The notes under the pieces: model-generated | Databases searched by the model: none | What the model was told of the DNA's origin: nothing | What the model saw: the letters and a program-made list of their open reading frames with translations, nothing else | Program-made: the position numbers and the translations under genes | Shown: in pieces, positions 1 through 18,195 of the stretch | Position numbering within the stretch: position 1 is the stretch's first letter | How the letters are laid out: every line of letters begins with the position of its first letter | NCBI RefSeq assembly: GCF_003704095.1 | Contig: NW_020844169.1 | Location: forward strand, 186,001 to 250,000 | From: Pocillopora damicornis | Taxonomy: Eukaryota | DNA length: 64,000 nucleotides | Direction: 5' to 3'

Positions 1-3000
1 TGGTGACTCACGGTTACGGCTTTCCAGGAATTGTACATCTAAGTAAGATGCCCCCAAACGTTCAGCCAGATACCTCCAGTTTCCGGGCTTGGACTCGATG
101 TCTAGCAGCTTCATTAATTTCATACGGACATCTTGTGGAATCGCTTTTCCTTTATGAGGACGTTGCCGCAGCGAAACTCCGTATTTAAAAGGATACCGAC
201 CATTTCCCTTCGAAAAAGAATGAGATCATTGAGGATCTTAAAGAATGTTGATTCAAGGGAGGAGGGCTTAAGCTAATATCAGCTAACATCAAACTTTGAA
301 ATCCCTTAAAGATTTTCCTGAGAACTATTTTCTTAACAATTTACAGCCCTAAACAGCTGCTTAGACCTAATCACTCATGAAATATGCACAGGGAACGCAA
401 AAGTGGTCATCCTCGATAAATTTAAGGGCGTAGTCTTTTTTAAATCAAACAAAAAAACTTAATAAGAGGGCTTCGTTGAAGGGCAATTCATAAATTTGGG
501 CCCACTAACCTTCATGAAGATGTGGAATCTCTTCATATATTCTTCCCAATAAGCGGAATAATCTTCATTATCGTCGTTTTCGTCTAAAATGAAAGGAAAA
601 ACCGCGTTTCAGATCCTGTCGGGTTTTTTTTACCGGGAGCTGGGAAGAAGCTGAATAGATGTGAATGCTACCAAAAAAATGTTAGTGCCAATCGGAACGC
701 ATAATACTTTAACACCCCCCCCGGGCAACCTACGGATAGTTGACCATCGTCTGTGCCCGGGTGGTGGGGAATTTGAACCTTGCCTCGGTGGGGTGGGGCA
801 TTTGAACCGGGGGTGCGAAGTCTTTCCAGCGAAATATCTATGTCTTAAAAGGTATAGAGTCCGCTTTCGTGACCGAATGGCTTAGAGAGACGATTTTAAT
901 TTCGTAGATGCTTACAAGCAGGAAACCCAACAGCAGCACCAAAAACCAATACTTAACTTAACAACATTCGCTGATCACACAAATTGTTTACTGTAGGACG
1001 GGGCATTTGAACGCAATTTTGGTTGGAATTTGGACGATCCAATCTTAAAAAGTTCAAATACACGAGGGATTGATGTTGAAGCTTCGAATGGATCCACGCA
1101 TAGGTCTCATGTTCATAAACGAGGTAAAACAGCAGCAATCACTTAACGTGTTTGGGATATAAGATACCTGACTTACACTGTCGTATATGAAATATCTCAG
1201 CCTCAATAAGACTCTCGTTAAGATAGGCGATATTTCAAGATAGATAAATTTTGATACCTCGTGTTGAGCATTAATAAGTGGTCCAGCCGTTGAAAGATTT
1301 TGGTTTCAGAAAAGTAGTTAAAACCGACGGGTCTCATGGCGGGAGGGGGAGAGAGAAGACTTCGACTTCGTAGCTCCACATTCTCACTAGATTGCGCCTA
1401 ACAAAACTTAAGGTGTAATATTTGCAGTTCTTCCCATGACAGGATGAAAGACAATGAACATCTCAATCATTTCACGATGGCCTCTCGCCGACGCATGATT
1501 AAAAAAAACAAAACAAAACAAATTAAAACTTTTTCCTACAGAAATATCTTAATAAATGTGAACAGCACCTCACGAGTAACTTAGAGGAACCTTTTTTCTT
1601 TAAAGGGAGTTGCCAAAAGAGCCGCTAAATTTGCGAAGCGCACAAAATGCGAAATTACGATGCCTTGAGTGCAACAAGATGACATGACCCATTCCGCGAA
1701 ATGATAGAATGGAGGAACGGTAGAACGGTGGCATGCCGGATCGGTGGAATGGCGGAAAGTCTTAAAACACAGAATGACGGAATATCCTAAAACATGGAAT
1801 GCCTTGTTGAAACTTAAGTCTGCCAAAAATGGAATTGCAATATCTTTTTCATGATTAACAGAAAAAATTAAAAGCAGCATTTCTACTGTTATCACTATTA
1901 CTATTATCATTATTAATACGATTAATTTTTACTATTTCATTCTTGGTTACACGTCAATTAGTCACTAAACTCTTGAATCACAGGTTTTCTGTTTTGAATG
2001 TGAATACAAATCTTCAGCAACACTACCTTCTAACGTTATTTTACAACCTTTGGTTTTTTCAGTGCTATAAAAATTGTGCCATATCAGTAGTCACATGCAG
2101 TCTCAGACCACCTATTTTCAGGTTTTAATAGGAATAATGAATGAGTTGCAAGTAATCGGATCCTTGCGTTTGCGCAAAGCTTTCTGGGATCGCCACCGAG
2201 CAAACACTGCAACTGTTAAATCAGAAATGGGTGCGGGTATTATCGATACAAGGGTTGCACGAAATTTTGTTCAAACAACCGTAAAATATGTAGTAAAATT
2301 TAGCGGTTACCTTTTCTCCATGCGCAAGAATTATGAAATTCACAAATATCAATTATAATTTGCCAAGAAATAACTCAATGAGGCATTTTCTGTTTTATTT
2401 ACAGGTGTTACCACTGCTATCTTTTCTCTTAGCTTGGTAAAACAAGAAAAAAAAAAAGAATGCTACAACAGCTACCTCGAGGAAGCAGGAAATTAAAATG
2501 ATATAATCGTGATACATTAAGTGATTAAACACCTACATTGCCTCTTTGTTGTGATCAATGAGAACGAAAGCGCTGATTGTCGGTTCAAAACTGAACCTTT
2601 TCTTATGCGATGATTAAAAGGTACAAATGGGTCGCTAAAGGAGCGATGCAGAACTGATTGCATGTCCACATTTTCTTCCGGAGTTCCCATGATCTTACTT
2701 TTCCTAACAAGATTCTCTGAAGAGCTCGAGAAGAAAAGTGGCAGCTCAAAAACATTAGGATTTTTCTCGACTAGCCATCACTTCACCAAGGGATTTCCTT
2801 TTGTTTTTCATCGCTTTTTAACTTAAGACCAACAGCTCGGTTAAACAATTTTCATCCCCGCTGACGACGACTTCTCTCCTTTGAGGAAGTATATTTCAAT
2901 TTCCGAGATAGTAATTTGTTTATGCAAGAATACAACTAAAAAGACTTAAGTGAGTTAGTTCCTTGTGATTTATGGCTACTTTTGTAATATGTCAAGACCA

Positions 3001-6000
3001 TTACGCGATGACGATTCCACAATGGACCTCACGCTGGGAGAGAAATCGGTATATTTTATAAGATATTTCGTGCTAATGCTAACGAGAACTTTCTCTTCCC
3101 TCGTATCAACATTATCTTAATCTATTTATGATAACACTGCGGCGAAAAAAGCGTTGACCTCTCTACAATAAGGTTTTTTTTGGACATCGAAACAATCCTT
3201 CGCCATATATTTTCTTCTAACGTGTAATGTTTGCCCCGTGGCGATCCCAGAAATCTTTGCGCAAACACAAGGATCTGATTACTGGCAACTTATTCATTGG
3301 TTATAATAAAAGTTTAGATCTAATCTTTTTATCTGCACTAGAAGTCAATCCACAACAGGAAAAGTAGTTACGCAGTGCTTTCGTTTATACTAAAATCAAA
3401 TATGCGTAGTTTCTAGTTTAGCCAAATTGCTAATTATGGCAAAAAGCCAATATTTTTTTGGTTAAAATGAACGATTTACCAGTTAGAGACCAGGGCCGGG
3501 TTGTTCAAAGCTAGGTTAAGATAACCCTGGGTTAGTGTGAAATCTGATTTCAGATCTGATGGCTTTAAGAGAAAATTCAGTCGGATTCTTTTTGTCACGA
3601 ATATGATTATTTGATGCTCTATAAAGAACACCAGAAACTATCCTAAAAAGGCATTTGAATAAAGGAATAAAGAAATTCAGATTAAAATTTAACCTTTGGT
3701 TAGCGCTAATCAACCTTCGAACAACTGGGCCCAGGAAAGCAGTGCTAGTGAGATATTTGAGAACATTCGGTCAACATTACTATGGAAGTGTCAGTTTAAC
3801 TCTTTACATACCAACATCCATACTCTACATATTATGATAATGTGGTCTGCTTACAGTATTACTGCGAGGAGAAATTAAATGCTGATCACTTGTAAGGTTT
3901 ATAGGGTTAACCTTACATGGCTTTTCGTCCCATTCTTCTAAATGAGCATGGTACCCTGGAATTTCAGTGCTTGAAGTTACTGGCGTTTTACTACCCCGTA
4001 CTTAGATTTTGTAAGATGTTCTATAGTGTTGAGTCAAGCTTTTTTGAATTTCTGTTATACCTCTAGAAAATAATAGGACAGAGAGGGAGGCTTCTAATCC
4101 AGGCCTTGGGATAACCAAGATATCTAATATAACATAACCTGCTTTCAGTTTTGTGCTTTCTGCCTCGAAAACCGAGCCAGTTATGAATAATAGAGAAGAC
4201 TTACCTCGCTAGAAGGGTTGTTCCTTTGTATCGTGTGGGTTTCTTAAGTTAATATAGGGAAGTTTAGCTCAGTTTTGCTCATGTAGTCTACTTTGCCCTC
4301 TATATAATATAAAAAGACCCATTTGGCATAATAACCGAGAATTTTTCCCTTCAAACGTAGTTCATGCCTCACTCGACTCACTGACTTTTTCACAAGGTAA
4401 GTTCAAATAAGATCTTCTCCATTTATGCCAGACTATTGGAAATAGTTCCTTGAGAGTCGTCCCTTGAATGGCACCATACTCCCTGGTGGTTACTCTTGAA
4501 TTTAAGGTTGGGCACTAAGCAATATCTGCTCCACAGAGGATCTCCATGCATGGTAATCAATAATGTAGAAATATGCCCCATCACATACTCTCTTGGCGAT
4601 TAACCCTTTACACCCTAATGTCATTATACATATTCTCCATACTGTTCTTTATACATATCCTAAGGTGCTGACAAGGAGAATTTGTTTACGGACCAAAAGC
4701 TTTTTTGTTGGTGATCATTTCCTTCATTCTTATGACCTTAGGGAGAAATTAGATGCTGGTCAGGGTTTAAAGGATTAATTCAGGCTACTAGATCGATATG
4801 GCATACTTGGCAATAATTCCGCTACCATAGCCTGCAATGAATATTGACAGAAGCTTATAAGGTTCTGACATGATTGCTATGATGGTAACGGAATTAGTAG
4901 CCTGCAGTGCAAGCGTCTTATTGGTGCGAGCAAACGCTATTAGCTCGCGATCGTTTATCCGATCAGCCATGTTTAATTTGGAGTTAGAGTGGACGGTAGG
5001 AGTAGGGGTCGGCTGCTTGGTACAAATCTCTTTCTGCCCTGCCTTCCGCTACCATTTTTGTTGAGAAGATACTGCGCACTCGCTCGCCAAATTACGCCTG
5101 CTCTGCAGGCTACGCAATTAGTAGCATTGCTGTAAGTATTGTATCGTAAATTGTATTGTCCACTTTGTAAAAATTGTTCCTTGAGACTGGAATTGGGAAA
5201 AAGAAAAAAACACTTGAGTTCCGCAAAAAGTGCAATATTTAAAGTAACGAAACGTTACGTTGTAGTTTTATAGCTGGTAACGCAACGCTATCAGTAGTAG
5301 TGTAACACACGTATGNNNNNNNNNNNNNNNNNNNNNNNNNNNNNNNNNNNNNNNNNNNNNNNNNNNNNNNNNNNNNNNNNNNNNNNNNNNNNNNNNNNNN
5401 NNNNNNNNNNNNNNNGTGACTTCATCTTTTTTGTTTTGTTTTATCTGTTATATTTACAATAACATCATACAACCTATTAAGCTCCTACTAGGTATAATGT
5501 TCTGTAATGTACTATTACATTATACTTTTACACTTGTCACTGGAAACCTCAGTCAGCCCAAGGACACAATCGCTAGCAATTTCATGAACAGTTAAGCATG
5601 TTCATTATGTAATATTTAGTCAATAAGTTTTTTGTTTGCACAAGGCATCTTTGATGTCAACTTGATTGATTGTTCTATATCAAATCATTTTTATATATGT
5701 ATTTGGGTATGAGCAATTTCGTAGTCTTAACTTTTTGAGGTGAGGAGGAGCCATAAGAAAAAGAAACCAGAATAATGCTCTACATACCATACACAGTGGA
5801 TAATTTTCCACCAAGCCACCCACCAAATGGAGATTATGCCTCACATTTGAGGACAAAGTCTTTTAAAAATGTGTCTTTGTGAAACTTCAGCATGCCTCAT
5901 CATGTTGCCCCCCCCCCCCCTCACCTTGCAGGAAGTAGGTTTGGTGGTTGCCAGTGACAAGTGCATTGCAAAATACTAAAACTGATAGAAGTTTACTCAC

Positions 6001-7669
6001 TATCCTTAACCCTTTAACTCCAAAGATCTCATTAGTAATTCTCTTTACTGTCTTCCAAATAATTCTCATTATGTTAGTTTGGAGAATTTGATATCAGATC
6101 AATTAGTAATCCCACAATTGACATTTTTCTTTATTCTCATCACTTGTGTGCATGATGTTGTATGGATGAAATAGGGAGAAATTCTAGCCTGGTCACTCAC
6201 TGGCCACTCACTGGCCTGGTCACTCATGGGAGTTAAAGGGTTAAACATAAAGGGAAAATATTTAAATTAATGATAGGTCCACTAGATAATAACGATAATA
6301 ACAAGGCATAATGTGCAACTACAATGTGTACAAATGATGCATAAGGCCCAATTACACAGGCATGATACATAAAATGTTCAATTACATTGTCCAGGAACAA
6401 GTATGATGTATATTTTGTCCTATTAATGCTGGGGAGATTAAAATCAAAATAAAAGAAATTAAAGATGGAAATTCTAAATACCAAAGGAACCAAACTGAAT
6501 GGGATTTAATGTAAAAAGTGAATATAATTATTTTTATGTTCAATTTATGCATGTTTGAGCTCTGAATCATGATACAAAGATATTGCAATGATAATGTATA
6601 TCGAAAACTATGTAAAGGAATTCTCTCCTAAATTTGACTGTCTGGTTATTTTTCAGGGCTTACTGTAGTTGCGAACCGAAACCAAAATTAACTTTTGCAA
6701 ATTATCTGTGCTGGCAAAGATGCCAGTTTCATTCAGGATAAGGTTATAGCAACGAAATAGTTCACGAACGGTTGGCTTTGAGCGGCTGTAAAAAATACCA
6801 GTTTTATTCATGATTATCTTAATTAACGAAATAGCCCATGAACGAACGGCTTTAAGGGATTGTAAAATAGCCAGTTTCATCCATGATCATTTTAAGTAAC
6901 GAAATAGCTAACGCAGGAATGGCTTCGAGCGACTGAAAAAAATACCAGTTTCATTCATGATTATTTTAAGTAACGGCATGGCCCACGAACGAATGGCTTC
7001 GAGTGATTGTAAAAATGCCAGTTGGTCGGGTACTTTTGCGATGTCTTTTATTTCTCTAGTGACCAAGACAAAATTTGTCAACGAAAAATGTGCTGGATAC
7101 AAGTAACGGTCTTCCTTTTGCGCGCCAAAATCTTAATTTTCGTTTCACAAGATAGACACTGAAATGAGAAACTCTAACAAACGGTTCGATCTTTCTCAAA
7201 ATGGTTACAAAAAGGGCTCTCTTTTAGAAAAATATCAAATTTTTTTCGTTTGTTTTTGTCCTTTTATTTACCCTAGTGTTTCACAACGGAATAGTCAGTG
7301 GCACCAAAGACGCCGAGCCATGTTTTGTTTGATTAAGAAATTAAAACGATGTTCCTACTACTTACGAGTTTTCGACATCTTTATCGTAGTTCATGAAGAT
7401 TCACTTAAGTTTGGTGACACTTAAAACTTGTAGAAAACGACATTTACGACACATGTAGAAAACTCAGTAAAATTCAACTTATAATTTACGACTAATAGCT
7501 AAATTTGTTCACTTTCGATCGAAGTTCACAGGCTAAAAAATACCAGTAAAATTAAAAACAACTTACCTAGATTTCGAAGATCTTTATAAGGCCTCTTTGA
7601 TATACAAAGGAGGCTGGAAAACCAACGAGAGAACGTAGAGAAGGAAATTTTAAGCAAGGAAGTCATCAT
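1..7669 (-). CDS. Death-domain-only protein, copy A (3' end runs off the window)
   Basis: Exons 7669-7567 (MMTSLLKISFSTFSRWFSSLLCISKRPYKDLRNL, donor gtaagt, phase 1), 583-510 (DENDDNEDYSAYWEEYMKRFHIFMK) and 207-<1 (GNGRYPFKYGVSLRQRPHKGKAIPQDVRMKLMKLLDIESKPGNWRYLAERLG...). Exon lengths (103, 74 nt) and splice sites match copy B. Extra exons in the intron-1 gap cannot be excluded. Confidence 0.7.
3494..3731. mobile_element. PIF/Harbinger-like MITE
   Basis: TIRs GGCCGGGTTGTTCAAAG...CTTCGAACAACTGGGCC with CAG on both flanks. A shorter relative lies at 36487-36600, also flanked by CAG. Confidence 0.65.
4604..4774. mobile_element. piggyBac-like MITE (family 1)
   Basis: TTAA-CCCTTT...AAAGGA-TTAA; the paralogous site at ~10479-10482 has a single TTAA. 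Relatives at ~12762-12968, 41680-41870, 47533-47745, 54430-54733 and 59338-59530. Confidence 0.75.
4898..5112. mobile_element. AcademH-like non-autonomous DNA transposon
   Basis: TIRs TAGCCTGCAGTGCAAGCGT / ACGCCTGCTCTGCAGGCTA with a 9-bp TSD (cggaattag/cgcaattag). Empty paralogous site at ~10593-10601. Confidence 0.75.
6010..6240. mobile_element. piggyBac-like MITE (family 2)
   Basis: TTAA-CCCTTTAACTCC...GGAGTTAAAGGG-TTAA; empty paralogous site at ~13472-13475. Other TTAA-CCC-type copies at ~38614-38794, 41945-42156, 43728-43890, 45722-45930, 49040-49215 and 57447-57647. Confidence 0.8.
6720..7025. repeat. Minisatellite, ~74-bp unit, ~4 copies
   Basis: CCAGTT(TCATT) recurs at ~6723, 6798, 6871, 6945 and 7018 with a shared AACGAAATAGC...GGCTTCGAG core. 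Confidence 0.8.
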
Positions 7670-7870
7670 CAAAGATCTTCTCAAAGAAGCTTGGCAAAAC
7701 TGAAATACCCGCGCGACTCAAAAGGGAGCCAATCAGAACAAGTTGAGTAGGTCATATGATGATTACGTATTAGGATGCGGTAAAAGCCGTATCAGATGAA
7801 CAAACAGTCTTGCTGGTCAGCAGTTCAACTTAACACTGTAAGGAACGTTGAATAAGCTAAATGTCTAGAC

Positions 7871-8054
7871 ATGACTCGCAAAGTTTCGCTTGTTGCCTTT
7901 TGTTATAGTTATAATCTCTACTGCTCTGTTATCCGAATACTTGCACAAACAAGGTAAAACGGTGATTTTGATTTTTTTATATTTATTTGTCGTCTCTTTT
8001 TTGTGTATATGCTTTTTGTACAGACTGGAGCCAGAAAAGATGCTATTGAATCAG
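7871..8054 (+). pseudogene. Truncated duplicate (exons 1-2 only visible) of the Pga1-like membrane protein gene
   Basis: 7871-7953 and 8024-8054 encode MTRKVSLVAFCYSYNLYCSVIRILAQTR|LEPEKMLLNQ, paralogous to 18196-18378. They are followed by an assembly gap and then the 3' end of DD copy B, so the rest could be hidden in the gap. Confidence 0.6.
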
Positions 8055-8542
8055 GTAAGTTTTAGGGAGTATTACAATATAATGATAACAACAACAATAA
8101 TGATGATGACGATAATGATAATAACAACAGAGAGGATAATAATAATAGAAATTCCATCTTTATTGTCATCTTTTGAGTAAAACACATAATCTAATATCAT
8201 TGTAATCTAAAATTATTATTATAACCTAAACTTACACAGAGACATTTGTAATANNNNNNNNNNNNNNNNNNNNNNNNNNNNNNNNNNNNNNNNNNNNNNN
8301 NNNNNNNNNNNNNNNNNNNNNNNNNNNNNNNNNNNNNNNNNNNNNNNNNNNNNTAATACTGTCCTATGTCTTTACATCCACTGCGGATCCAAGCTCGATT
8401 TCTCTGTGGAGCGAGGTTGGCATGGTCTCATTTCCTTAGTAGTGGCCTACTCGGAACCAATTCCTCGCGTAATTTAACACAGTAACAACGTCAGCGCGGT
8501 CATGGTCAATGCGGAACCCACTGTCCTGGTCTTTTACATCTA

Positions 8543-10826
8543 TTAAGGATCCAATCGATTTCGTTGAGGAAGAGTAGGGAGGAGTGTGGGCTTATTCCCT
8601 GACCAGTGGCCTATTTGGCATCTATTAATCTCGTCATTTAACACAGAAACAACATCGTGGCGGTCAAAGTCAATAAAGATGTCTCTCAAAAAAGTTAAAG
8701 ACTTGTTCATTGTTTCGAATACGTTGAGGACGTGTTGCGTTGGTGACTCGTGGTTGCGGCTTTCCAGGAATTGTACATCTGAGTAAGATGCTCCTAAACG
8801 TTCAGCCAGACACCTCCAGTTTCCGGGCTTCGACTCGATGTCTAACAGCTTCATTAATGTCGTACGGACAGCTTCTGGAATCTTTTTTCCTTTAAGAGTG
8901 CGTTGCCGTGGCCAAATTCCGTATTGAAAAGGATGCCAACCATTTTCCTTTGAAAAACGAATGAGATCATTGAGAATCTTAAAGAATGTTGATTCAAAGG
9001 GGGAAGGCTTATGCTAATATCATAATTTGCAACCCCCTGAGGATTATCGCGGTAAATCTTTTTTTAACGATTTACAGCCCTAAAAAGCTGGTTAGACCTG
9101 ATCACTCATGAAATACGCACAAGGAACACACTATTGGAGAGGCAAAAGTGGCCATCCTCGATAAATTCAAGTGCGTAGTCTTTTTTAATCAAACGAAAAA
9201 CTTAATAAAAGGGCTTCGTCAACAGGAAATCATGGATTAGTGCCCACTAACCTTCATTAAGATGTGGAATTTCTTCATATATTCATCCCAATGAGCGAAG
9301 TTATCTTCACTATCTTCGCTTTCGTCTACAATGAAGGGAAAAACCGCGTTTTAACTTCCGTGGGTTTTTTCGGGGAGCAAAAACGCGAAAGCCTAAACTT
9401 GTGGTGTAAAACGAGCATCACGGGGGCGAAAAGAATCTGAATAGATGTGAACCCATCTAAAAAAAATCCAGTACTAATTAGAACTCATAATGCTTTAACA
9501 TACTCTCGGGGAAGAGACAAAACAGCAACAATCACTTAACGTATTTGAGATATAAGATACTCGTCTTACACTATCCTATATGAAATATCTCAGGGGCGGA
9601 TCCGGAAATATTTGTTGAGGAGAGTCCAGACTTTTATTTAGAAAAAAATATTTTCTTTTACTTAAGCCTTAATAAGACACTCGATGAACTAAGCGATATT
9701 TCAAGATAGATAAATTTTGATACTTCGTGTTGAGCATTACTAAGTGGTTCTGACGTTGAAAGATTTTTTCGGTTCCGGAGAAGTAGTTAAAACCGACAGG
9801 TCTCGCGGCTGGGGGCGGGGGCAGATCCCTACCCCTCCTCCCCTTCCGCCTCTTGGATCCGCCACTATAAGCGGAGTTTGGGGCATGAACGAAGGAATTA
9901 AAAGTCTTAGTCCACGGACCAGGTTGGAAGAAAGCTCACACTCTCATAATTTTTGTGGCTACTGCCTCCTATAGGGAGCGAGGCCACATATGTCGTCGAA
10001 ATGTAGGAGTGAGTGATTGAGTGAGTGTAACGATGGAATGCCGAACTTCATCCGATTTTGACCCGATGTCACTTATCGTTTGTTTTGGTGTATTTTCGTA
10101 GTTCGACATTCACACCAGAGATTATAATCGCAACATATACTCAAGAAAGAGGGATGTCTTTCGAAACAAATTATTTTGTGCCTAAAAACCCAGGGAGTAA
10201 TTTTTCAGTTCTTCTCGTGACATTATGGAACAGGATAAACATGCCATTTCACGATCGCCTCTCGCCGACACGTGATTAAAAAACAAAACAAAACTTTTCC
10301 CTGCAGAAATATCTTGATAGATGTGATCGGCACATCATGAAAAACTTAGAGGAAACGTTTTTCTTTGAAGAGAGAGCATTTCATCGTTTGAATCAGTAAC
10401 TTATTATCTGATCTACTGAGAGTCTCCCTGCGTCGCAATCAATGTAGAAATGTACCCCATCAAACACTATCTACGTGATTAATTCAGGTTACTAAATCGA
10501 TAAGGCGTACTTCGTAACAATTCTGCTACTGTGGCCTGCAATAAGTATTATCAGAAACTTAAAAGCTTCTGGTATGGCTGTAAGTAAGGTAACGCAATTA
10601 GTTGCATTGCTGTAAGTATTGTACCGTAAATTGTATTGTCCACTTAACGAAAAATTGTTTCTGATACTGGAATAAGAAAATTGAGAAAAAAAAACACTAG
10701 AGTACCGCAAAAAGTATAATATTTGAAGTAACGAAACGTAACTTTAGTTTTATTGCTAGTAACGCAACGTAATCAGTAGTAGTGTAACTCACATATAATA
10801 AATATATCTTATTAGACGTTTTGGTG

Positions 10827-10858
<32 letters not shown>

Positions 10859-13800
10859 TCGTATTTTGACGAGCCCGTAGGGCGAGTCAAAACACGAACC
10901 CTAACACTTACCCTGCACTTATTGAAAAAAGTTATACATTGGTGAAACTGGAAGACAACTAGGTGACCGATTCTGAGATCACCTTCGCGGCGTTCTTGAA
11001 AGAAATGACAAGGACACATCCAAACCAGTAGCTAGACACTTGAATCTCCCTTATCAGTTTGCGGCCTTTCCCTACCTCTAGGCAGTTCAGAGAGCCGCAA
11101 AACCCCTAGGGCAAAAATGTTTCTTTCAAATCGGCACTCTCATTCCCCTCGGTATCAACGAGCGTTTTTCATTCAACTAATTTTTTTCGTCACCATATTT
11201 CCACGTGACAGAAATTTGTTCCACCTTAACAAAAGATATATGACTGTACGATCTACGGTGAAAAAAATTATGAATTTGGAATAATTGAATAACAATTATT
11301 CAATGACAAATATGCATTCAACTCACTATCTCTTTTCTGATTAACCGAAAGCGTGCAGTGAACTTTTGAAATCGGCGTCTGAGACGTCATGTAACTACAG
11401 ACTATACAATAATCACGTCAAGGGCACTCAAGGACACTGGTAATCACGTCATGTATATGAGTGCAGTGCACGATTTCTAATGGTAATCATGTCAAATTCA
11501 CGTGCTTTGTTTTGTTTGCTAATTTGTATATTTTAACAAGCTTAATAATACATTATCAGTTCCGCTTACTATGGTGACCATTCAACGATGACTGAGGAGC
11601 TGGAAACTCTCCACCAGACACGTAAAGCATAAAACAATGAATCATAAAACAATTTTCGTGTATCATAAAACAATTAGATTCGGTTTTGGTGATATCCGGA
11701 AAAATCAACGTCTCATTAAGGGTTATCAGCCGAAGCCTACTTCGACCTTGATTATTCTGAATATCACAAAGACCTCATCCAATAATTTATTAATATTATT
11801 GTTCTCCAATTCCCTTCCCGGACTTTAATATCAAGTTTTTTTTTCAGTAGGATCAGTAATTTCTGCTTGATCAAGATGTTTGATTGTACATTAAAACCCC
11901 ACTAACACGAACCATCTTCTAACTCAAACACGGTCCACTTAACCTTGAATTTTACCCCTATTTTTCAGTCATAAACAGTCAACTCAAACTTGGTAATTGT
12001 AACTCCCTGTTAAATAGTACTACTACCCGGATAACTTGAACTTTATAATGGTAATTGAACCGAGTCGAGAGCAATTTGACTGAAATCATATGCGATTTCA
12101 AAACTAAACATGCGCGCAGCTCGAGTTTGAATTCACAAGTATGATTTCAGACCAAAATTGGATTAAAAGAAGTTCAATTACCACTTTAAAATTGCAAAAT
12201 TCAGCCACTCAATACAAGTTTTTAAGTCTGTACAGATATTTTATTGATTCAGTATATTGAGCTGGTTTGACGTCTCGACCTTATGTCGCATCTATTGTGA
12301 AATCACTGGTGATCCTGCAATCTGATTGGCTTTCACCAGTGCGGTTTAATCACAAATCACACCACTTTTTTCTCAACCTATGAGAAAACTTTACAACCAA
12401 TCCTTATTCAAACTTCAAGACTTGTTTAAAATAACCAATCAGTTAGAGGAAAAGGAAAGGCGGCATTTACAACTTTTTACATACTAGCTCAGTACTGGAT
12501 CAATGAAATATCTGAAGACTGAAAAAATCCTGTATTTGGGAAGCTGAATTTTGCAATTTCGAAATGGATGTAATAAAGTGGCAATTGAACCATTGACTGA
12601 TCCGTTCCCCTTCCCTTTTCTTAATTTTTGTCTATTTCTCCTCATTTTATTTTCTCCTTTTCCTTCACTCACTACAATTTTCAATGTCCACCGATTTATG
12701 AAGAGTTATGCTGTATACAGGGTGATGTTCAGAAGCTCGGAGTTGCAAATGTGGTTGTTCATTAACCCTTTACACCCTAGTATGCACCTTCTCCATACAG
12801 TTACCTAGACATTTCCTAAAGTGCTGAAAAGGAGAATTTGTTTTAACAATCAGGGGCTTCTTTAGTTGGTGATCATTTCCGTTATTCTCATGATCACAAA
12901 TGAATGATTCAGCGGTACAATTGTCAGGAGAAACTAGATGCTGGTCACTCTTTGGGTTGAAAGGGTTGACTCACACACTCAAGAGATAAAGCCTATTGTA
13001 ACTTACTCATGCGAGACCAGTGATTAACTACAAGGCACTTTACAGGGTTGAGTATCCATGATCTGACTCCTACTACAATACCAAGACAACCATGTCCAGC
13101 TGTTAATTCATACATCTCCATTTTGTTCCTTTTTCTCCATTTTTCCCCTTCATTTCATTTCCTTTTTTCCCCTTTCGTTTCTTTGAATCCCTCTTTATCT
13201 TATGTTCTCTCATTTTCTCTCACCTCTTTTTAATCTATGTTATTTTCACTTTTTTTCTTTTTTCTCTATTTTTATCTAATTTTCTCTTTTTTATTTCTCT
13301 TTGTTTTTNNNNNNNNNNNNNNNNNNNNNNNNNNNNNNNNNNNNNNNNNNNNNNNNNNNNNNNNNNNNNNNNNNNNNNNNNNNNNNNNNNNNNNNNNNNN
13401 NNNNNNNNAGTGGTTACCAGTGACAAGTGCATTGCAAAATATTAAAACTGATAAAAGTTTACTCACTATCCTTAAACATAAAGGGAAAATATTCAGATAA
13501 ATGATAGGTTCATCAGGTAATAACAACAGTCGAGAAATTAAAACAATGTTCTTACTAATTATGAGGTTTCAACTACTGTATCTTAGTTCATTAAGATTCA
13601 CTCAAGTTAGGTGACATGTAAAACACGTAGAAATAGGACACTATAACTCAGTAAAAATCTACTAAAAATAATTTACAACTAATAGCTAAACTCATTCAAT
13701 TTCCATTGAAGTTCACAGGCTAAAAAATACCAGTAAAACTAAAAATAACTTAAGGAGGCTCTATAGGGTTTTTGTTCAATGTTAGTGTGTGCACCAGTGA

Positions 13801-16450
13801 AATGTTTTCTGAAAAATTTTAATGTTTTTTTCTTTTCAAGGTCACTAAAAGCCATCAAAAGGCAATGAACAGGGTTCAGACAATTGTTTGCTGTAGTAAA
13901 TATGATCAAAATGATTTTCCTTATTAAACTAAGGTTCCACAAAGGGAGGTGCTTGCCAGTGATAATTTGGCTTTGCCCTTGATTTTCTTCAATTTACTTC
14001 ATTGAGATCTCTCAAGATTTTCACAATTTATTAAATTTGTCCTGCTGATCATTTAAAAGCCAAAAAAATAGGAGTTACAAAGGCAGTTTCCTCGCTATTT
14101 GAAATTTTGTGTTTTCTCCTCAAGTTTGGTCTTCAGAATTATTATAAATGGACACTAGGAAGGGCACAAATCTTAAGAAATTCCACCGAAGAAAAGTGAT
14201 AAATCTTGCTCAAAAGATCCCTATTTTCTCTATTACATAACATTTCATTATGGAATAGAACTTTACCAAGATCTGTATCTGAGTATGCATAAACTTTCAA
14301 CTCTGTTGCCTTTGGGCAATCTTTCCCACTGTGTTTTCTTTTTGCTTGACCTCTTTTTCAGATGTAAAAGGCCTATGAATATTACAGGTGAATTTGCTGG
14401 AAACCCTAGATTCCATAACATAATTACTGTAATGTGTTAAACTGTTTTAACACACCTTTTCAGATGACAATGGAGCTATTGTATCGAGCCACCATGTTTG
14501 TTCTTAAATTTCACACTATGTTTGCATCCAGATCTCACCTGGTCAAAAAACCCTATAAGGCCTCCTTAAAATAATAATAATTCTAGTATTTCTATAGCCC
14601 TGTTTCCATAGAAATGATCAGTAGCACTTTAGAATGATTCACCAATTACAATATTCTACAACAATCTAAGTATACCATGTAAAATGTAACTGAGACTTAC
14701 AATTAAATAAAACAAACCAGATTGAATAATATTCATAAAAACTTGAATAAAATAAAATTTTTGGTCTTAAAAAGTTAAAGAAAAAAACTGACCAAAAAGG
14801 TAGGTCTTAAGATTGCTTTAGAAAATTGCCAATGGAAAAGCATGCAATTCAGTGGGCAAACTCTTCCACAAACATGGTGCAGCAGGACAAAAAGATCTAG
14901 CACCAAGGGTAGAAAGCATTTTCTCTTTAGGCAGCTCCAGCAACAAGGTGCCATTAGATCTAAGTTATGGGAAGCCATTTATGCCAAAAATATCAATCGC
15001 TAGTAATAAAACGCAATATTTAGTGCTTTTTCTTAAATAACTCTGTATTTTGTCCTTTCAGTCTTTTGCTGAAGATTGTAAAATGCGAGGCACTGCTTTC
15101 TCCCTGATAGGTTGCTACTTTCTCCTCAAGAGGTTGAAATAAGAGTGATTTTCATTCTAAAAATATTTTGTTTCCCATTCGCTAGATCTAGACCGCTGAC
15201 TTTGAAAGAGTTTCCATTGTTTGTGCCCAGGCGTGGCTCACAAAAATGCAAAACGTTTGGTTTCGCACAATGATTTGGTGGTGTTAGCTAGGCGATCGCT
15301 TCGCGATTCGCGCAATATCGGTTTTTCGCGTCAAATTTAACGTGGAATTCACTCGTCAAGCAATGAATTTTTCTTTAGAATCGATAAGAAATTGATACTT
15401 GCACTAGCGATTGATATCTTTTAATAGCACCAACAATTGACTAAACGTCCAGCAGCTAAACACAGTCTTAAAGTAACTGAACGACCGGCAGTCCGATATT
15501 TTTCCATATTTCTCTTCGAAATCCATACGAAAATGTTCTACCTTTATTAACAATCGTCAAGCGCTTCCTGGCAGCCAAAAATTTCGAACTTAACGTTTTT
15601 CGCCAACCCGGTATACAGAGTACGAAGCCATCAAGGCGCTTAACACTTAGAAACTATTCAATAATTACACGTCTGGAGGCGGTCCTCAAATACCTCCATA
15701 TTTCTCTTTGAATATTCCAATTTTCCCTGGGAAATATTCTACCTTTATTTAGAATCCTCAAGCGCTTCTAGAGAGTGAAAAAAATTCGAACGTTGTCTGT
15801 GTCGCCGACTTTGTACACAGAGTACGAAGAGATCCAAGCGTATTAAACACTTAACAAATTTTCTTCGAACACTGCCGCACACTGTCTTCGAATAGCTAAA
15901 CGTCCGGCAGTCCGGTATATTTCCATATTTCTATTGGAAAATATTTTATCTTTAGAATATTTCAAAGAGAAATATGGAAGTATTTGAGGACGGTGTCCGG
16001 CCGTGTCATTGAAAAGTTTCTAAGTGTCCAGCGCTTGGATGGCTTCCTACGCTGTATACATGTTCGGTACGGCTCCCCATACTAAGTTGTAAGAGGACTT
16101 CGGCCAAACACTAATTAAATCACTAATTTACAGTGGCGTAAATCCATGAATTGCCTTAAAAGCTAAGATTAATATCTTATAACGAATACGAGCAACTACT
16201 GGCAGCCAGTGAAGATCGTAGAGTTGGCGTAACATAGGAATGCTTGCTGATGTTCATAGCAAGCCTCGCCGCTTCATCCTGAATACGTTGTAATGTTAAG
16301 ATCTGCGATTTAGGTAAACCATACAAGAGACTGACTAATAGTCTTACCAAGATTTCCAAGATCTTTGTAAGGTCCCTTTAATTTACCAAAGAGGATGGAA
16401 AACCGACGAATGAAGCTCGCAAAGAAGGGAATTTTAGACGGTGTATTCAT
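8543..16450 (-). CDS. Death-domain-only protein, copy B (~193 aa)
   Basis: Exons 16450-16348 (MNTPSKIPFFASFIRRFSILFGKLKGPYKDLGNL), 9325-9252 (DESEDSEDNFAHWDEYMKKFHILMK) and 8947-8543 (ENGWHPF...LMKLLDIESKPGNWRCLAERLGASYSDVQFLESRNHESPTQHVLNVF...DFDRHDVVSVLNDEI...). Phases join in frame. The W-x-x-LA-x-x-LG / SPT / R-x-DVV pattern is typical of death domains. Confidence 0.75.
10905..11180 (+). mobile_element. Penelope-like retroelement fragment (GIY-YIG endonuclease 3' end), degenerate
   Basis: Translates to KKLYIGETGRQLGDRF*DHLR...KPVARHLNLP...FQIGTL..GINERFSFN*, with stops and frameshifts. Confidence 0.85.
13754..14565. mobile_element. Kolobok-like non-autonomous DNA transposon
   Basis: TTAA-GGAGGCTCTATAGGGTTTTT ... 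AAAAACCCTATAAGGCCTCC-TTAA. Confidence 0.7.
14990..15417. mobile_element. MITE nested in the LINE fragment
   Basis: Perfect 15-bp inverted termini ATATCAATCGCTAGT / ACTAGCGATTGATAT. Confidence 0.55.
15440..16070. repeat. Diverged ~195-bp tandem repeat with a terminal inverted copy
   Basis: TTCTACCTTTATT, CAAGCGCTTC and ACAGAGTACGAAG each occur twice ~200 bp apart. 15955-16065 is the reverse complement of ~15610-15720. Confidence 0.7.
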
Positions 16451-16600
16451 CCTCAAAAGGCTTCACAGGAGGAAGTAAGTGCTTGGCAAAATGGCTTGAC
16501 GTTGAACTACATATCGCGTAATTCTATAGGGAGCCAATCAGGGCAACTTGAAAGGGTCACATGATGATTACGTACTAGGGTGTGGACCAGGCTGTGCGCG

Positions 16601-18118
16601 CACTCTGATTGCGTTCCAACATGGTCCTAACATGAAGAAACGAGACATATTGGCATCTTTTTGTGGTTGAGTGATCTCTGGTGGTGCTGAGATAGCGTGA
16701 ATAAACGTGGAATGTAATGGAGATTCACTGTTTGTTGCCGTTCCTTCGAAAGTTAAAAAGTGTTTGCGGGCCTGCGCGACTCCTGTTATTCCTCTGTGAC
16801 AAATTCGTTGTTGGGAAGCAACCGAAGAGATTCAGAAAGAGTCGAGACACCAGCCGTGCCCAAGAATCTATTCATTTGGCGGCAGTTACACTCGCAGCCG
16901 ATGGCTGTGTGAATAATATAAAATTCACGAGTTATTTAACGGGGAATCGACCCTTACAAACGCATTAATTAAATTACAAAGAGACAACGACCTTCTAAGA
17001 CACGAACTACTTTCCGTGTCATATACCTAATGGCGTAAATACGGGATTTCGCAAAAGGAGAAGCCTTACGCCTTCTAAGATCAAATTCGCCACGAATGTA
17101 TTTATCAACGTCTGATAAAAAATGTACATGGTTTCAAATATGCTTAAAGAATAAAGAATACCTGGAATAAGGTTTTGAGAAACGTATCTCTTGAGTTATT
17201 GTATTTTATACCTGAAAACAGAAAAAATAGCGCGCACAAATAATAATATTACCTTTTGTAACACAATCTCATCCGGCTGTGCCAAACCTCAAGAAGACCA
17301 AGAACATACATATGGAGTAATAACTCCTTGAAACTAACCTTTATTATCGCATCGCAAACAAAAGTCATTAAAATATATCCTTATAACAGCCAAGCTTTCA
17401 GGTCTGAAGATTTAAAAGGGCAAGCGAATGGCAGGAGTCGCGCAAGCCTATCGACATTAACGCTCGACTGCCTTTTGCTTTCCGGCTTATCCGGCGTGTC
17501 GCTGTGTGCATTGTAGAGCTATTCATTGGTCAAGTGACTTTTTCCTTTGCTCTAATTCATCTGTCCTTCATTCATTGATCAAGATAATACATTTACCGCA
17601 CAACACTCGCCATTAGTAAATTTCCTTTTTACTCAGGAAAGTAGATTTACAACACAATTAAGTATACGATGTAACGCTGTGTAACGCAACAATAGGCCTC
17701 TTCTCGGCCATAATCGGTCTCAAACACTAGCACTTAAAATGTGAAAAACACATGTACCGTTGTAGAGTGTTTGAGAGCGTTTGGTCAGAGCTGTTAAAGA
17801 AGGATCAAAGCGACCATCCAAATCTTTGAAAGGCTTCAAACTACGACGTACATCAAATTTGACCCTCTCAAAAACCGGTCTCAAATTACTTACTTACTAA
17901 CGTGATTTATTACCGGACAATGTCAATACTAACTCTTCNNNNNNNNNNNNNNNNNNNNNNNNNNNNNNNNNNNNNNNNNNNNNNNNNNNNNNNNNNNNNN
18001 NNNNNNNNNNNNNNNNNNNNNNNNNNNNNNNNNNNNNNTCAGTCAAAATCTGCCGATTTCTGCTGCTTTCACCGCCATATTGAAAATGGCGCTACCACAA
18101 TGTAACGCAATCGGAGTG
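16601..18118. mobile_element. EnSpm/CACTA-like element inserted in the DD-B / Pga1-like promoter (spans a gap)
   Basis: Ends CACTCTGATTGCGTT / AACGCAATCGGAGTG, flanked by CG on both sides. Absent from the paralogous promoter at ~7770-7790. Confidence 0.55.
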
Positions 18119-18195
18119 CGGAAAGCCGCATCAGATGAACAAACAGTCTTGCTAGTCAGCAGTTCAACTTAAATAATGAGGCTAAGTTTTTAAAC

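What the first reader, a model, noticed from the sequence alone, without database searches (positions are those of the whole stretch)
8543..16450. Hidden family of death-domain-only proteins with an N-terminal basic amphipathic helix
Seen: splicing three exons across a ~7-kb TE-filled intron gives a ~193-aa protein. Its 34-aa exon 1 is rich in F/L/R/K/S with no acidic residue in the first 29 aa (PFFASFIRRFSILFGKLK; copy A SFSTFSRWFSSLLCISKR). An acidic patch and aromatic helix follow (WDEYMKKFHILMK), then a death domain, with no TIR, kinase, NACHT or TM partner. Both copies keep identical exon sizes (103, 74 nt) and phases while exon 1 diverges strongly in amino acids. Known: death domains nucleate signalosomes (Myddosome, DISC, PIDDosome), and cnidarians have expanded death-fold repertoires. 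Inference: a membrane- or mitochondrion-targeted DD adaptor, decoy or effector in an expanding innate-immune array.
Basis: partly seen in the sequence, partly recalled or inferred. Interest (0 to 1): 0.75.

Follow-up and report, generated by a model that had tools for sequence, protein, structure and literature searches.

The report
Small coral death-domain-only gene pair
This is a real, expressed and already catalogued coral gene, one of two neighbouring copies, that encodes a small protein made of little more than a death domain; the idea that its front end is a membrane or mitochondrial address tag is not supported so far.

Summary
The three-exon minus-strand model is correct: exon 1 16450-16348, exon 2 9325-9252, exon 3 8947-8543. 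Its exon peptides sit in order in RefSeq XP_027036881.1, [quoted passage not shown], 193 aa. So the gene is unstudied, not hidden.

- **Domain:** exon 3 carries a Pfam Death domain (E 5.4e-8). It models as a six-helix bundle.
- **Expression:** the exon 2/3 splice is present in 4 of 4 RNA runs from four studies.
- **Assembly gap:** the gap at 13309-13408 lies inside intron 1, which is full of repeats. It touches no codon.
- **Partner domains:** none was found. Of 140 open pieces in 7684-18168, 1 hits Death and none hits any other signalling domain.
- **Copy number:** the "family" in this genome is two tandem genes. Relatives occur in other Pocillopora and in Oculina, where NCBI names them "UNC5C-like".
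- **Selection:** only the death-domain core is under purifying selection (omega 0.22, p 0.005). Exon 1, exon 2 and the pre-domain stretch evolve about neutrally.
- **N-terminal helix:** it has low model confidence and weak amphipathicity, and it is absent from several paralogue models.

This scan had already noted death-domain-only genes on other DNA of this genome (s1-765108). Interest is low to moderate.

The parts
16348..16450 (-). Copy B exon 1 (103 nt, start codon at 16450, phase-1 donor). It encodes the 34-aa basic, hydrophobic leader.
   Evidence: It equals residues 1-34 of RefSeq P0052. This exon plus its promoter matches only two places in the genome. I did not test its transcription directly for copy B.
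16500..16600 (-). Promoter-like block conserved between copies A and B, with TACGTAATCATCAT and CTGATTGGCTCCCT motifs.
   Evidence: Alignment A1. Reading the ATTGG as a reversed CCAAT box is from recall.
9326..16347 (-). Intron 1 (7,022 nt), filled with interspersed repeats. It contains the assembly gap 13309-13408.
   Evidence: dozens of dispersed copies for at least 5 stretches; no protein domain in its open pieces; position of the gap.
9252..9325 (-). Copy B exon 2 (74 nt): an acidic patch plus the aromatic helix WDEYMKKFHILMK.
   Evidence: It is joined to exon 3 in 4 of 4 RNA runs. The motif is conserved in paralogues and in Oculina.
8948..9251 (-). Intron 2 (304 nt, GT..AG).
   Evidence: Joint 8946/9251 (cut +1), skipping 304 nt, in X1, X3 and X11; the same joint is placed at 8951/9256 in X12. 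It is 86.5% identical to intron 2 of copy A.
8543..8947 (-). Copy B exon 3 coding part: a pre-domain stretch, the death domain (aa 32-105 of the exon peptide), a 26-aa tail and the stop at 8543-8545.
   Evidence: Pfam PF00531 at E 5.4e-8 and 33.3 bits against a cut-off of 22.6. AF2 helices 84-172 at pLDDT about 80-85. Z 10-11 to solved death domains.
8354..8542 (-). Copy B 3'UTR. It holds a degenerate second copy of the approximately 155-nt unit that ends the death domain, and it runs into the gap 8254-8353.
   Evidence: Alignment A5. RNA contigs cover 8354-8946 and continue beyond 8354 into the N run (records 10, 16, 23, 24).
7567..7669 (-). Copy A exon 1 (103 nt).
   Evidence: RNA contig X1 record 1 (321 nt) lies on 7567-7675 and leaves the genome exactly at the predicted donor, with 212 more letters elsewhere.
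510..583 (-). Copy A exon 2 (74 nt).
1..207 (-). Copy A exon 3, the part inside the window. The rest lies left of the window at L002 1552-1878. Its stop comes 26 codons earlier than in copy B.
   Evidence: The RefSeq product is P0086 (117 aa).

Best explanation
Copy B is the annotated P. damicornis gene LOC113665410. It is a transcribed three-exon gene, and its 193-aa product has one folded module, a death domain, behind a fast-evolving and probably disordered N-terminal extension. The gene is one of two tandem duplicates. It belongs to a small family seen in Pocillopora and Oculina corals.

**Shown**
- The gene structure.
- The exon 2/3 splice in RNA.
- The death-domain fold, and purifying selection confined to it.
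- The absence of any other domain.

**Inferred**
- The protein works as a soluble adaptor, or as a competitive regulator (decoy or cap), by inserting its death domain into helical death-domain assemblies of the MyD88/IRAK, UNC5/ankyrin or p75/TNFR type.
- The conserved W-(D/E)-E-Y-x-K-x-F helix of exon 2, or the variable leader, supplies a second contact.
- Translation probably starts in exon 1, because the exon 2 peptide upstream of its internal Met is conserved at the protein level between genera.
For: **Model and annotation**
- The exon peptides equal RefSeq XP_027036881.1.
- Death domain: Pfam E 5.4e-8.
- AF2 gives six helices at pLDDT about 80-85.
- VIA-align gives Z 10-11 and rmsd 2.0-3.8 over 80-100 residues to FADD, MyD88, IRAK4, p75NTR and UNC5H2 death domains.

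**Expression**
- 18 of 19 listed runs hold exon 3. Ten are on record as RNA, and the holders span 9 studies.
- The exon 2/3 joint is in 4 of 4 RNA runs laid.
- The copy A exon 1 contig leaves the genome at the predicted donor.

**Selection, A versus B**
- Domain core: 7 nonsynonymous and 8 synonymous changes, omega 0.22, Fisher p 0.0047.
- Nonsynonymous density is about 5 times lower there than in exon 2 plus the pre-domain stretch (p 4e-5).

**No partner domain**
- Of 140 open pieces, 1 hits Death. The only other hits are two marginal ones at E about 0.005.

**Exon 2 helix**
- It is conserved in Pocillopora paralogues A, B, C and D and in Oculina P0154.

**Exon 1**
- It is kept as a 34-codon open frame in three copies: B, A and P. 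verrucosa P0140.
Against: - No functional data exist. The adaptor or decoy role is inferred from the domain alone.
- I did not see the exon 1/exon 2 junction of copy B in RNA. Two contigs run 29 and 27 letters past the exon 2 acceptor, but those letters were not shown.
- NCBI starts 4 of 6 Pocillopora family models at the Met inside exon 2.
- An X12 contig carries an extra base in the A-run at 8882. That puts exons 1-2 out of frame with the domain (ORF P0065).
- An unspliced contig in X11 covers 7400-7898, and a low-depth contig in X12 lies in intron 2. Some signal may therefore be pre-mRNA or DNA.
- The subfamily cannot be fixed. A wide profile ranks UNC5H2 first (7.8e-14, against MyD88 at 3.8e-12). 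A narrow family profile ranks MyD88 first (1.2e-5, against UNC5H2 at 0.018).
Confidence: 0.6

Rival explanations
1. The 34-aa exon 1 peptide is a functional basic amphipathic helix that takes the death domain to a membrane or into or onto mitochondria.
For: - Net charge is +5, +5 and +6, with 0-1 acidic residues in 34 aa, in B, A and P. verrucosa. F/L/I positions recur at i, i+4, i+8.
- The 18-residue hydrophobic moment is 0.51-0.65. Only 2.3% (A) and 1.2% (P. verrucosa) of shuffles reach it.
- The open frame, start codon and length are kept in three copies.
- An Oculina GenBank model (P0154) also begins with a hydrophobic, non-acidic 21-aa leader.
Against: - For copy B itself, 10-13% of shuffles reach the observed moment.
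- AF2 pLDDT is below 50 for residues 1-42.
- The exon is T-rich (35-39% T), which alone yields F/L/S-rich peptides.
- Exon 1 is more diverged between A and B (67% ungapped) than neutral intron 2 (86.5%).
- Paralogue transcripts P0045 and P0048 have unrelated N-termini, and 4 of 6 NCBI models omit it.
- No targeting predictor was available.
Confidence: 0.15
2. Exon 1 is only a 5' leader. The real product is the roughly 117-143-aa protein that starts at the Met in exon 2, or at MKLLD in exon 3.
For: - RefSeq models P0086 (copy A), P0085, P0005 and P0126 start at MK(K/R)FHI(L/F)MK.
- The Oculina RefSeq model P0155 starts at the end of exon 2.
- An X12 contig has a frameshift upstream of the domain, and its ORF starts inside exon 3.
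- Exon 1 and exon 2 show no purifying selection between A and B.
Against: - The peptide upstream of that Met (F/H-A-H/Y-W-D/E-E-Y) is conserved at the protein level between Pocillopora paralogues and Oculina. Oculina has no Met at that position.
- Exon 2 has no in-frame ATG upstream of the Met, so a start in an upstream exon is needed for it to be coding.
- RefSeq uses the exon 1 ATG for the B-type gene in two species.
Confidence: 0.2
3. The pair consists of decaying duplicates, that is, transcribed pseudogenes without a selected protein function.
For: - The C-terminal tails differ: copy A stops 26 codons earlier.
- The 3'UTRs hold degenerate partial domain copies.
- One RNA contig has a frameshift allele.
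- The N-terminal parts evolve neutrally.
Against: - The domain core has omega 0.22 with p 0.0047.
- Both copies keep open frames and splice sites.
- The domain is 50-58% identical in relatives including the cluster with named Oculina members.
- polyA RNA runs from several studies hold it.
Confidence: 0.05

Closest known systems
MyD88 death domain (Myddosome: PDB 3MOP, 6I3N)
   Same: It is the best solved-structure match for the narrow family profile (E 1.2e-5) and second for the wide profile (3.8e-12). Structural Z is 10.4-10.9. The motif pattern W-R-x-L-A ... S-P-T ... R-D-D is shared.
   Different: There is no TIR domain, either in the protein or in the locus. The protein is 193 aa with a unique N-terminus. 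Orthology is not shown.
UNC5 netrin-receptor death domain (PDB 1WMG, 3G5B); NCBI names the P. verrucosa and Oculina relatives 'UNC5C-like'
   Same: It is the top match for the wide profile (7.8e-14). Foldseek TM is 0.77 and rmsd 2.4. VIA-align Z is 10.1.
   Different: There is no Ig/TSP1 ectodomain, TM, ZU5 or UPA. With the narrow profile the match falls to E 0.018. The name is automatic and rests on the domain only.
p75NTR / NRADD death domains (PDB 4F44, 2N80, 2IB1)
   Same: Profile E is 1.4e-8 to 1.4e-6. Sequence identity in structural alignments is the highest seen, at 24%.
   Different: Those are type I membrane receptors. This protein has no signal peptide, TNFR repeats or TM segment.
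Small death-domain adaptors such as EDARADD or Drosophila Tube (recalled, not tested here)
   Same: By recall, these are short proteins whose only folded module is a death domain behind a short partner-binding N-terminal region. That is the architecture seen here.
   Different: No sequence relation was tested or found. Neither EDARADD nor a standalone Tube chain is among the 47 listed PDB hits; Tube shows up only in the title of the Pelle-Tube entry 1D2Z. No TRAF-type motif was identified.

Membership tests
Death domain (Pfam PF00531, death-fold superfamily) | Profile match above the curated cut-off | tested here: met
   33.3 bits against a cut-off of 22.6, E 5.4e-8, profile positions 5-84 of 86.
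Death domain (Pfam PF00531, death-fold superfamily) | Six-helix antiparallel bundle | tested here: met
   AF2 gives helices 84-95, 102-109, 114-122, 128-138, 143-152 and 156-172 at pLDDT about 80-85. Z is 10-11 to solved death domains. This is a predicted model only.
Death domain (Pfam PF00531, death-fold superfamily) | Homotypic assembly with other death domains | not testable with these tools
   This needs binding or oligomerisation assays.
UNC5 netrin receptors | ZU5-UPA-DD cytoplasmic supramodule behind an Ig/TSP1 ectodomain and a TM segment | tested here: not met
   Of 140 open pieces in 7684-18168, 1 hits Death and none hits ZU5 or UPA. The RefSeq product is 193 aa.
MyD88 adaptors | Death domain followed by a TIR domain | tested here: not met
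   No TIR hit in the locus. The protein ends 26 aa after the death domain.
Mitochondrial presequence / membrane-binding amphipathic helix | Positively charged, acid-free N-terminus | tested here: met
   Net charge is +5 to +6, with 0-1 D/E in 34 aa, in three copies.
Mitochondrial presequence / membrane-binding amphipathic helix | Helical amphipathicity beyond what the composition gives | tested here: inconclusive
   The share of shuffles reaching the observed 18-residue moment is 10.3% (B), 2.3% (A) and 1.2% (P. verrucosa). AF2 gives a helix at 10-20, but with pLDDT below 50.
Mitochondrial presequence / membrane-binding amphipathic helix | Positive call by a trained targeting predictor, or observed localisation | not testable with these tools
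   TargetP, MitoFates and DeepLoc are not available. No localisation data exist.

The most novel reading that the evidence does not exclude
The family may be a coral-specific class of leader-tethered, death-domain-only scaffolds. In this reading a hydrophobic, basic leader is conserved in kind but not in sequence between Pocillopora and Oculina, and it parks the domain on an organelle membrane.

Alternatively, the free UNC5/MyD88-like domain could act in trans as the missing third module for the death-domain-less ZU5-UPA proteins that this scan noted elsewhere in the same genome (s1-778989, not tested here). That would make a split UNC5-type supramodule.
Probability: 0.1. Interest if true: 0.6.

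Novelty: new member of a known kind. Interest (0 to 1): 0.22.

Why it matters
Corals carry very large death-domain repertoires whose wiring is unknown. Small proteins with only a death domain are the simplest candidates for adaptors or brakes in those pathways, and a two-gene family is easy to test.

As it stands, this locus adds a verified, expressed example with a clear selective signature: the domain is constrained and everything else is free. It also suggests that several RefSeq models of the family (117-128 aa) are probably truncated at the N-terminus. It does not reveal a new kind of system.

Tried and rejected
**Genomic context of homologues.** The look-up of encoding contigs for the transcript-derived ORF P0010 and the P. 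verrucosa protein P0005 was closed. I could not read relatives' transcripts or loci.

**N-terminal search.** Searching with residues 1-58 of the public protein P0052 found nothing. This is uninformative. That database holds only cluster representatives, and P0052 itself sits under a 103-aa representative.

**Exon 1 in metagenome contigs.** An exact 28-nt stretch of exon 1 gave 0 hits.

**Tandem repeat in the 3'UTR.** TRF found none at 8354-8800. A direct alignment shows a diverged second unit.

**Subfamily assignment.**
- It is not robust by sequence. Single-sequence phmmer gave IRAK3 at 0.035, p105 at 0.057 and UNC5H2 at 0.54.
- The wide and narrow profiles disagree.
- Structural Z values are tied within 1 unit for at least seven death-domain families.

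**Sushi-repeat hit.** P0021 (E 2e-34, 28 stretches) matches only the tail RCQIGHWSGNKP, at about 5 bits per stretch. The motif is not kept in P. verrucosa (RSQIGHGSG). I rejected it as chance.

**Nearest paralogues.** I fetched 10-kb flanks of three distant death-domain hits (L006-L008). They lie on the wrong side of the minus-strand matches, so I did not analyse them.

**Literature.**
- A search for LOC113665410, XP_027036881, LOC131791132 and XP_066029620 found 0 papers.
- 'death domain' + Pocillopora + UNC5 found 1 paper, PMC8260672. I read passages only. It treats death domains joined to NACHT and in NF-kB, not small death-domain-only proteins.
- A broader search gave 23 papers, of which I saw only the listing of 15.
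- I did not open supplementary tables of coral expression or domain surveys (for example Supplementary Table 5 of PMC8260672). They may list this locus.

**Not done.**
My searches of the model went exon by exon.
The gene spans 7.9 kb, the limit was 6,000 letters, and only one call was allowed.

Full report
**What is there.**

On the minus strand, three exons with canonical GT..AG borders give an open frame.
- Exon 1 is 16450-16348 (103 nt): MNTPSKIPFFASFIRRFSILFGKLKGPYKDLGNL.
- Exon 2 is 9325-9252 (74 nt): ESEDSEDNFAHWDEYMKKFHILMK.
- Exon 3 is 8947-8543 (134 codons plus stop).
- An in-frame TGA lies five codons upstream of the ATG.

The exon 3 peptide hits Pfam Death (PF00531) at E 5.4e-8 and 33.3 bits, against a cut-off of 22.6. 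Exons 1 and 2 hit nothing.

A second copy, A, lies just downstream on the same strand.
- Exon 1 is 7669-7567 and exon 2 is 583-510.
- Exon 3 runs from 207 across the left edge of the window.

All my searches of the model went exon by exon.

**It is already annotated.**

The window is contig C804:186001-250000 of a 234.35-Mb assembly in 4,393 contigs.

The 90% cluster of the exon 3 ORF contains XP_027036881.1, [quoted passage not shown]. It is 193 aa, on a 368,244-bp contig. Its sequence begins with the exon 1 peptide, has D at the split codon, and carries the exon 2 peptide from residue 36 and the exon 3 peptide from residue 60.

Other NCBI models of the family:

| Protein | Source | Length | Start |
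|---|---|---|---|
| P0086 | copy A, same contig | 117 aa | Met inside exon 2 |
| P0140 (XP_066029620.1) | P. verrucosa, "UNC5C-like protein" | 181 aa | exon-1-like leader, 20 of 34 residues identical to B, then the same exon 2 and exon 3 |
| P0005, P0126 | P. verrucosa paralogues | 117 and 119 aa | exon 2 Met |
| P0154 (KAL9967077.1) | Oculina patagonica, GenBank | 170 aa | different hydrophobic leader (MLNQLLLNRLGYVCAFFAALY), then HAYWEEYFKIFDIIMT and the domain |
| P0155 | Oculina patagonica, RefSeq | 128 aa | at the end of exon 2 |

No paper in the searchable library names any of these loci.

**The gaps.**

N runs lie at 5316-5415, 8254-8353, 13309-13408 and 17939-18038.
- The flagged gap (13309-13408) is inside intron 1, thousands of bases from either splice site. 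The reading frame does not depend on it.
- I could not show continuity across it. The evidence that exon 1 belongs with exon 2 is indirect: two RefSeq models in two species, and the same layout in copy A.
- The gap at 8254-8353 sits in the 3'UTR. RNA contigs that cover 8354-8946 continue for some 200-270 letters beyond 8354, that is, into the unread stretch.

I filled no gap.

**Expression.**

Exon 3 words are held by 18 of 19 listed runs. Ten are on record as RNA, and the holders span nine studies.

I laid Logan contigs of four RNA runs from four studies on 7400-13300.
- The exon 2/exon 3 joint (304 nt skipped, GT..AG on the minus strand) is present in 4 of 4 runs.
- One contig (X1 record 1, 321 nt) lies on 7567-7675. 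That is copy A exon 1 from six bases before its ATG to exactly the predicted donor. Its remaining 212 letters lie elsewhere. That count equals 74 nt of exon 2 plus 138 nt of exon 3, but the letters were not shown.
- Two contigs (X3 record 24, X12 record 16) continue 29 and 27 letters beyond the copy B exon 2 acceptor. Again the letters were not shown.

Against a clean picture:
- X11 has an unspliced contig over 7400-7898.
- X12 has a low-depth contig inside intron 2.
- The X12 transcript contig carries one extra base in the A-run at 8882, and its ORF (P0065) starts inside exon 3.
- Contigs cannot show levels or strand.
- Copy B exon 1 itself was outside the 6,000-letter stretch I could lay.

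**No hidden partner domain.**

All 140 stop-free pieces of 35 aa or more, without N, on both strands of 7684-18168 were scanned against Pfam.
- One hits Death.
- Two hit unrelated families at E about 0.005.
- None hits TIR, kinase, NACHT, TNFR, ZU5 or UPA.

Intron 1 is repeat-filled. Stretches at about 10914-11204, 11311-11583, 12756-12971, 13750-14569 and 15435-15947 each have dozens of dispersed copies at 76-86% identity.

**Size of the family.**
- In this assembly, the exon 3 peptide has two strong matches (B, and A at 82%) and three distant ones at E 2e-4 to 8e-4.
- Exon 1 plus promoter matches two places.
- The exon 2 peptide matches two places.
- Across 1.84 billion representative proteins, only 25 score E<=1e-3 and 12 score E<=1e-10.
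- Named members are Pocillopora and Oculina only.

This is a tandem pair in a small coral family, not an expanding array at this locus.

**Selection (A versus B, Nei-Gojobori).**

| Region | Nonsynonymous | Synonymous | omega | Fisher p |
|---|---|---|---|---|
| Domain core (exon 3 codons 32-108) | 7 | 8 | 0.22 | 0.0047 |
| Pre-domain codons 1-31 | 15 | 2 | 2.5 | 0.34 |
| Exon 2 | 9 | 1 | 1.26 | 1.0 |
| Exon 1 (ungapped) | 24 | 10 | 0.59 | 0.32 |

- Exon 1 is 67% identical ungapped at the DNA level. A gapped alignment needs +1, +2 and -3 indels. Neutral intron 2 is 86.5% identical.
- Nonsynonymous density in the core is about five times lower than in exon 2 plus the pre-domain part (p 4e-5).
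- Copy A stops 26 codons earlier than B (TGA for AGA), so the tail is not conserved.

**The N-terminus.**

In favour of a functional leader:
- It is basic: net charge +5, +5 and +6, with 0-1 acidic residues.
- It is rich in F/L/S.
- It stays open at 34 codons in three copies.

Against:
- The 18-residue hydrophobic moment is 0.51 (B), 0.61 (A) and 0.65 (P. verrucosa). It is reached by 10.3%, 2.3% and 1.2% of shuffles respectively.
- The longest uncharged run is 8-9 aa, so there is no TM segment.
- The exon is 35-39% T, which biases any frame towards F/L/S.
- AF2, run on a 27-row alignment headed by the public protein, gives pLDDT below 50 for residues 1-42, about 51 for the exon 2 helix (43-60), and about 80-85 for the domain.
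- Transcript-derived ORFs of two paralogues (P0045, P0048) have unrelated sequence before exon 2.

One argument that translation does begin upstream of the exon 2 Met is conservation. The peptide F/H-A-H/Y-W-D/E-E-Y before that Met is conserved between paralogues and in Oculina, which has no Met there. Exon 2 also has no earlier in-frame ATG. Hence the 117-128-aa RefSeq models are probably N-terminally short.

**Which death domain?**
- Single sequence against PDB sequences: IRAK3 0.035, NF-kB p105 0.057, UNC5H2 0.54.
- Wide profile (27 rows): UNC5H2 7.8e-14, UNC5B 5.8e-13, MyD88 3.8e-12, IRAK3 2.5e-9, p75NTR 1.4e-8.
- Narrow profile (13 close rows): MyD88 1.2e-5, UNC5H2 0.018.
- Foldseek: p75NTR, UNC5H2 (TM 0.77), NRADD and MyD88, all with E above 0.001 because half the model is disordered.
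- VIA-align: FADD, MyD88, IRAK4, ankyrin-G, RIPK1, p75NTR and UNC5H2 all at Z 10.1-11.0, which is tied.

The fold is a death domain of the MyD88/UNC5/p75 sequence neighbourhood. No orthology to any of them is shown. NCBI's "UNC5C-like" label rests on the domain alone.

**Verdict.**
A real, expressed, death-domain-only protein exists.
- The gene is already in RefSeq, the local family has two members, and the targeting-helix idea has weak and mixed support.
- The most likely mode of action is homotypic death-domain binding as a small adaptor or competitive regulator. This is an inference from the domain.
- Earlier notes of this scan describe many other death-domain clusters in the same genome, including death-domain-only genes and ZU5-UPA genes without a death domain. 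I did not test these. They only frame the speculative split-supramodule reading.

Noticed in passing
window 8354-8672 and L002 1310-1612 (minus strand): In both copies the last ~155 nt of the death-domain exon (helix 6 plus tail) is followed in the 3'UTR by a diverged second copy of the same unit. In copy B the series runs into the assembly gap at 8254-8353, which may be why the assembly broke there. TRF did not score it; a direct alignment shows it.
   Followed up: partly
window 8882 and 8544: A transcript contig of RNA run X12 carries one extra base in the A-run at 8882, which is a frameshift between exon 2 and the domain. It also has a changed stop codon (8544 T>A). Its ORF is P0065. This may be a divergent allele or species, a pseudogenised copy or a contig error.
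   Followed up: partly
window 8543-8623 (tail of copy B): The tail RCQIGHWSGNKP matches the end of Sushi/CCP repeats in a 1,638-aa protein, P0021 (28 stretches, summed E 2e-34). The motif is not conserved in P. verrucosa or translated in copy A, so I judged it a chance match.
   Followed up: yes
window 16500-16600 and 7700-7800 (minus strand): A conserved promoter-like block is shared by both copies about 60-120 nt upstream of the ATG (TACGTAATCATCAT..TGACC..CTGATTGGCTCCCT). It is better conserved than exon 1 itself.
   Followed up: no
window 16177-16359 (minus strand): Right after the exon 1 donor, intron 1 of copy B has an open piece (..LLYGLPKSQILTLQRIQDEAARL..). From recall it resembles the C-terminal end of non-LTR retrotransposon ORF2 proteins. 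Pfam gave no hit, and copy A lacks it.
   Followed up: partly
window 15611-15720 and 15952-16059: Two inverted copies of a ~105-nt repeat, with many dispersed copies elsewhere, lie inside intron 1. The arrangement looks MITE-like.
   Followed up: no
window 12719-12915: Summed contig depth is very high in all four RNA runs (571 to 5,773) over a short interspersed repeat in intron 1. This is an expressed repeat family, not this gene.
   Followed up: no
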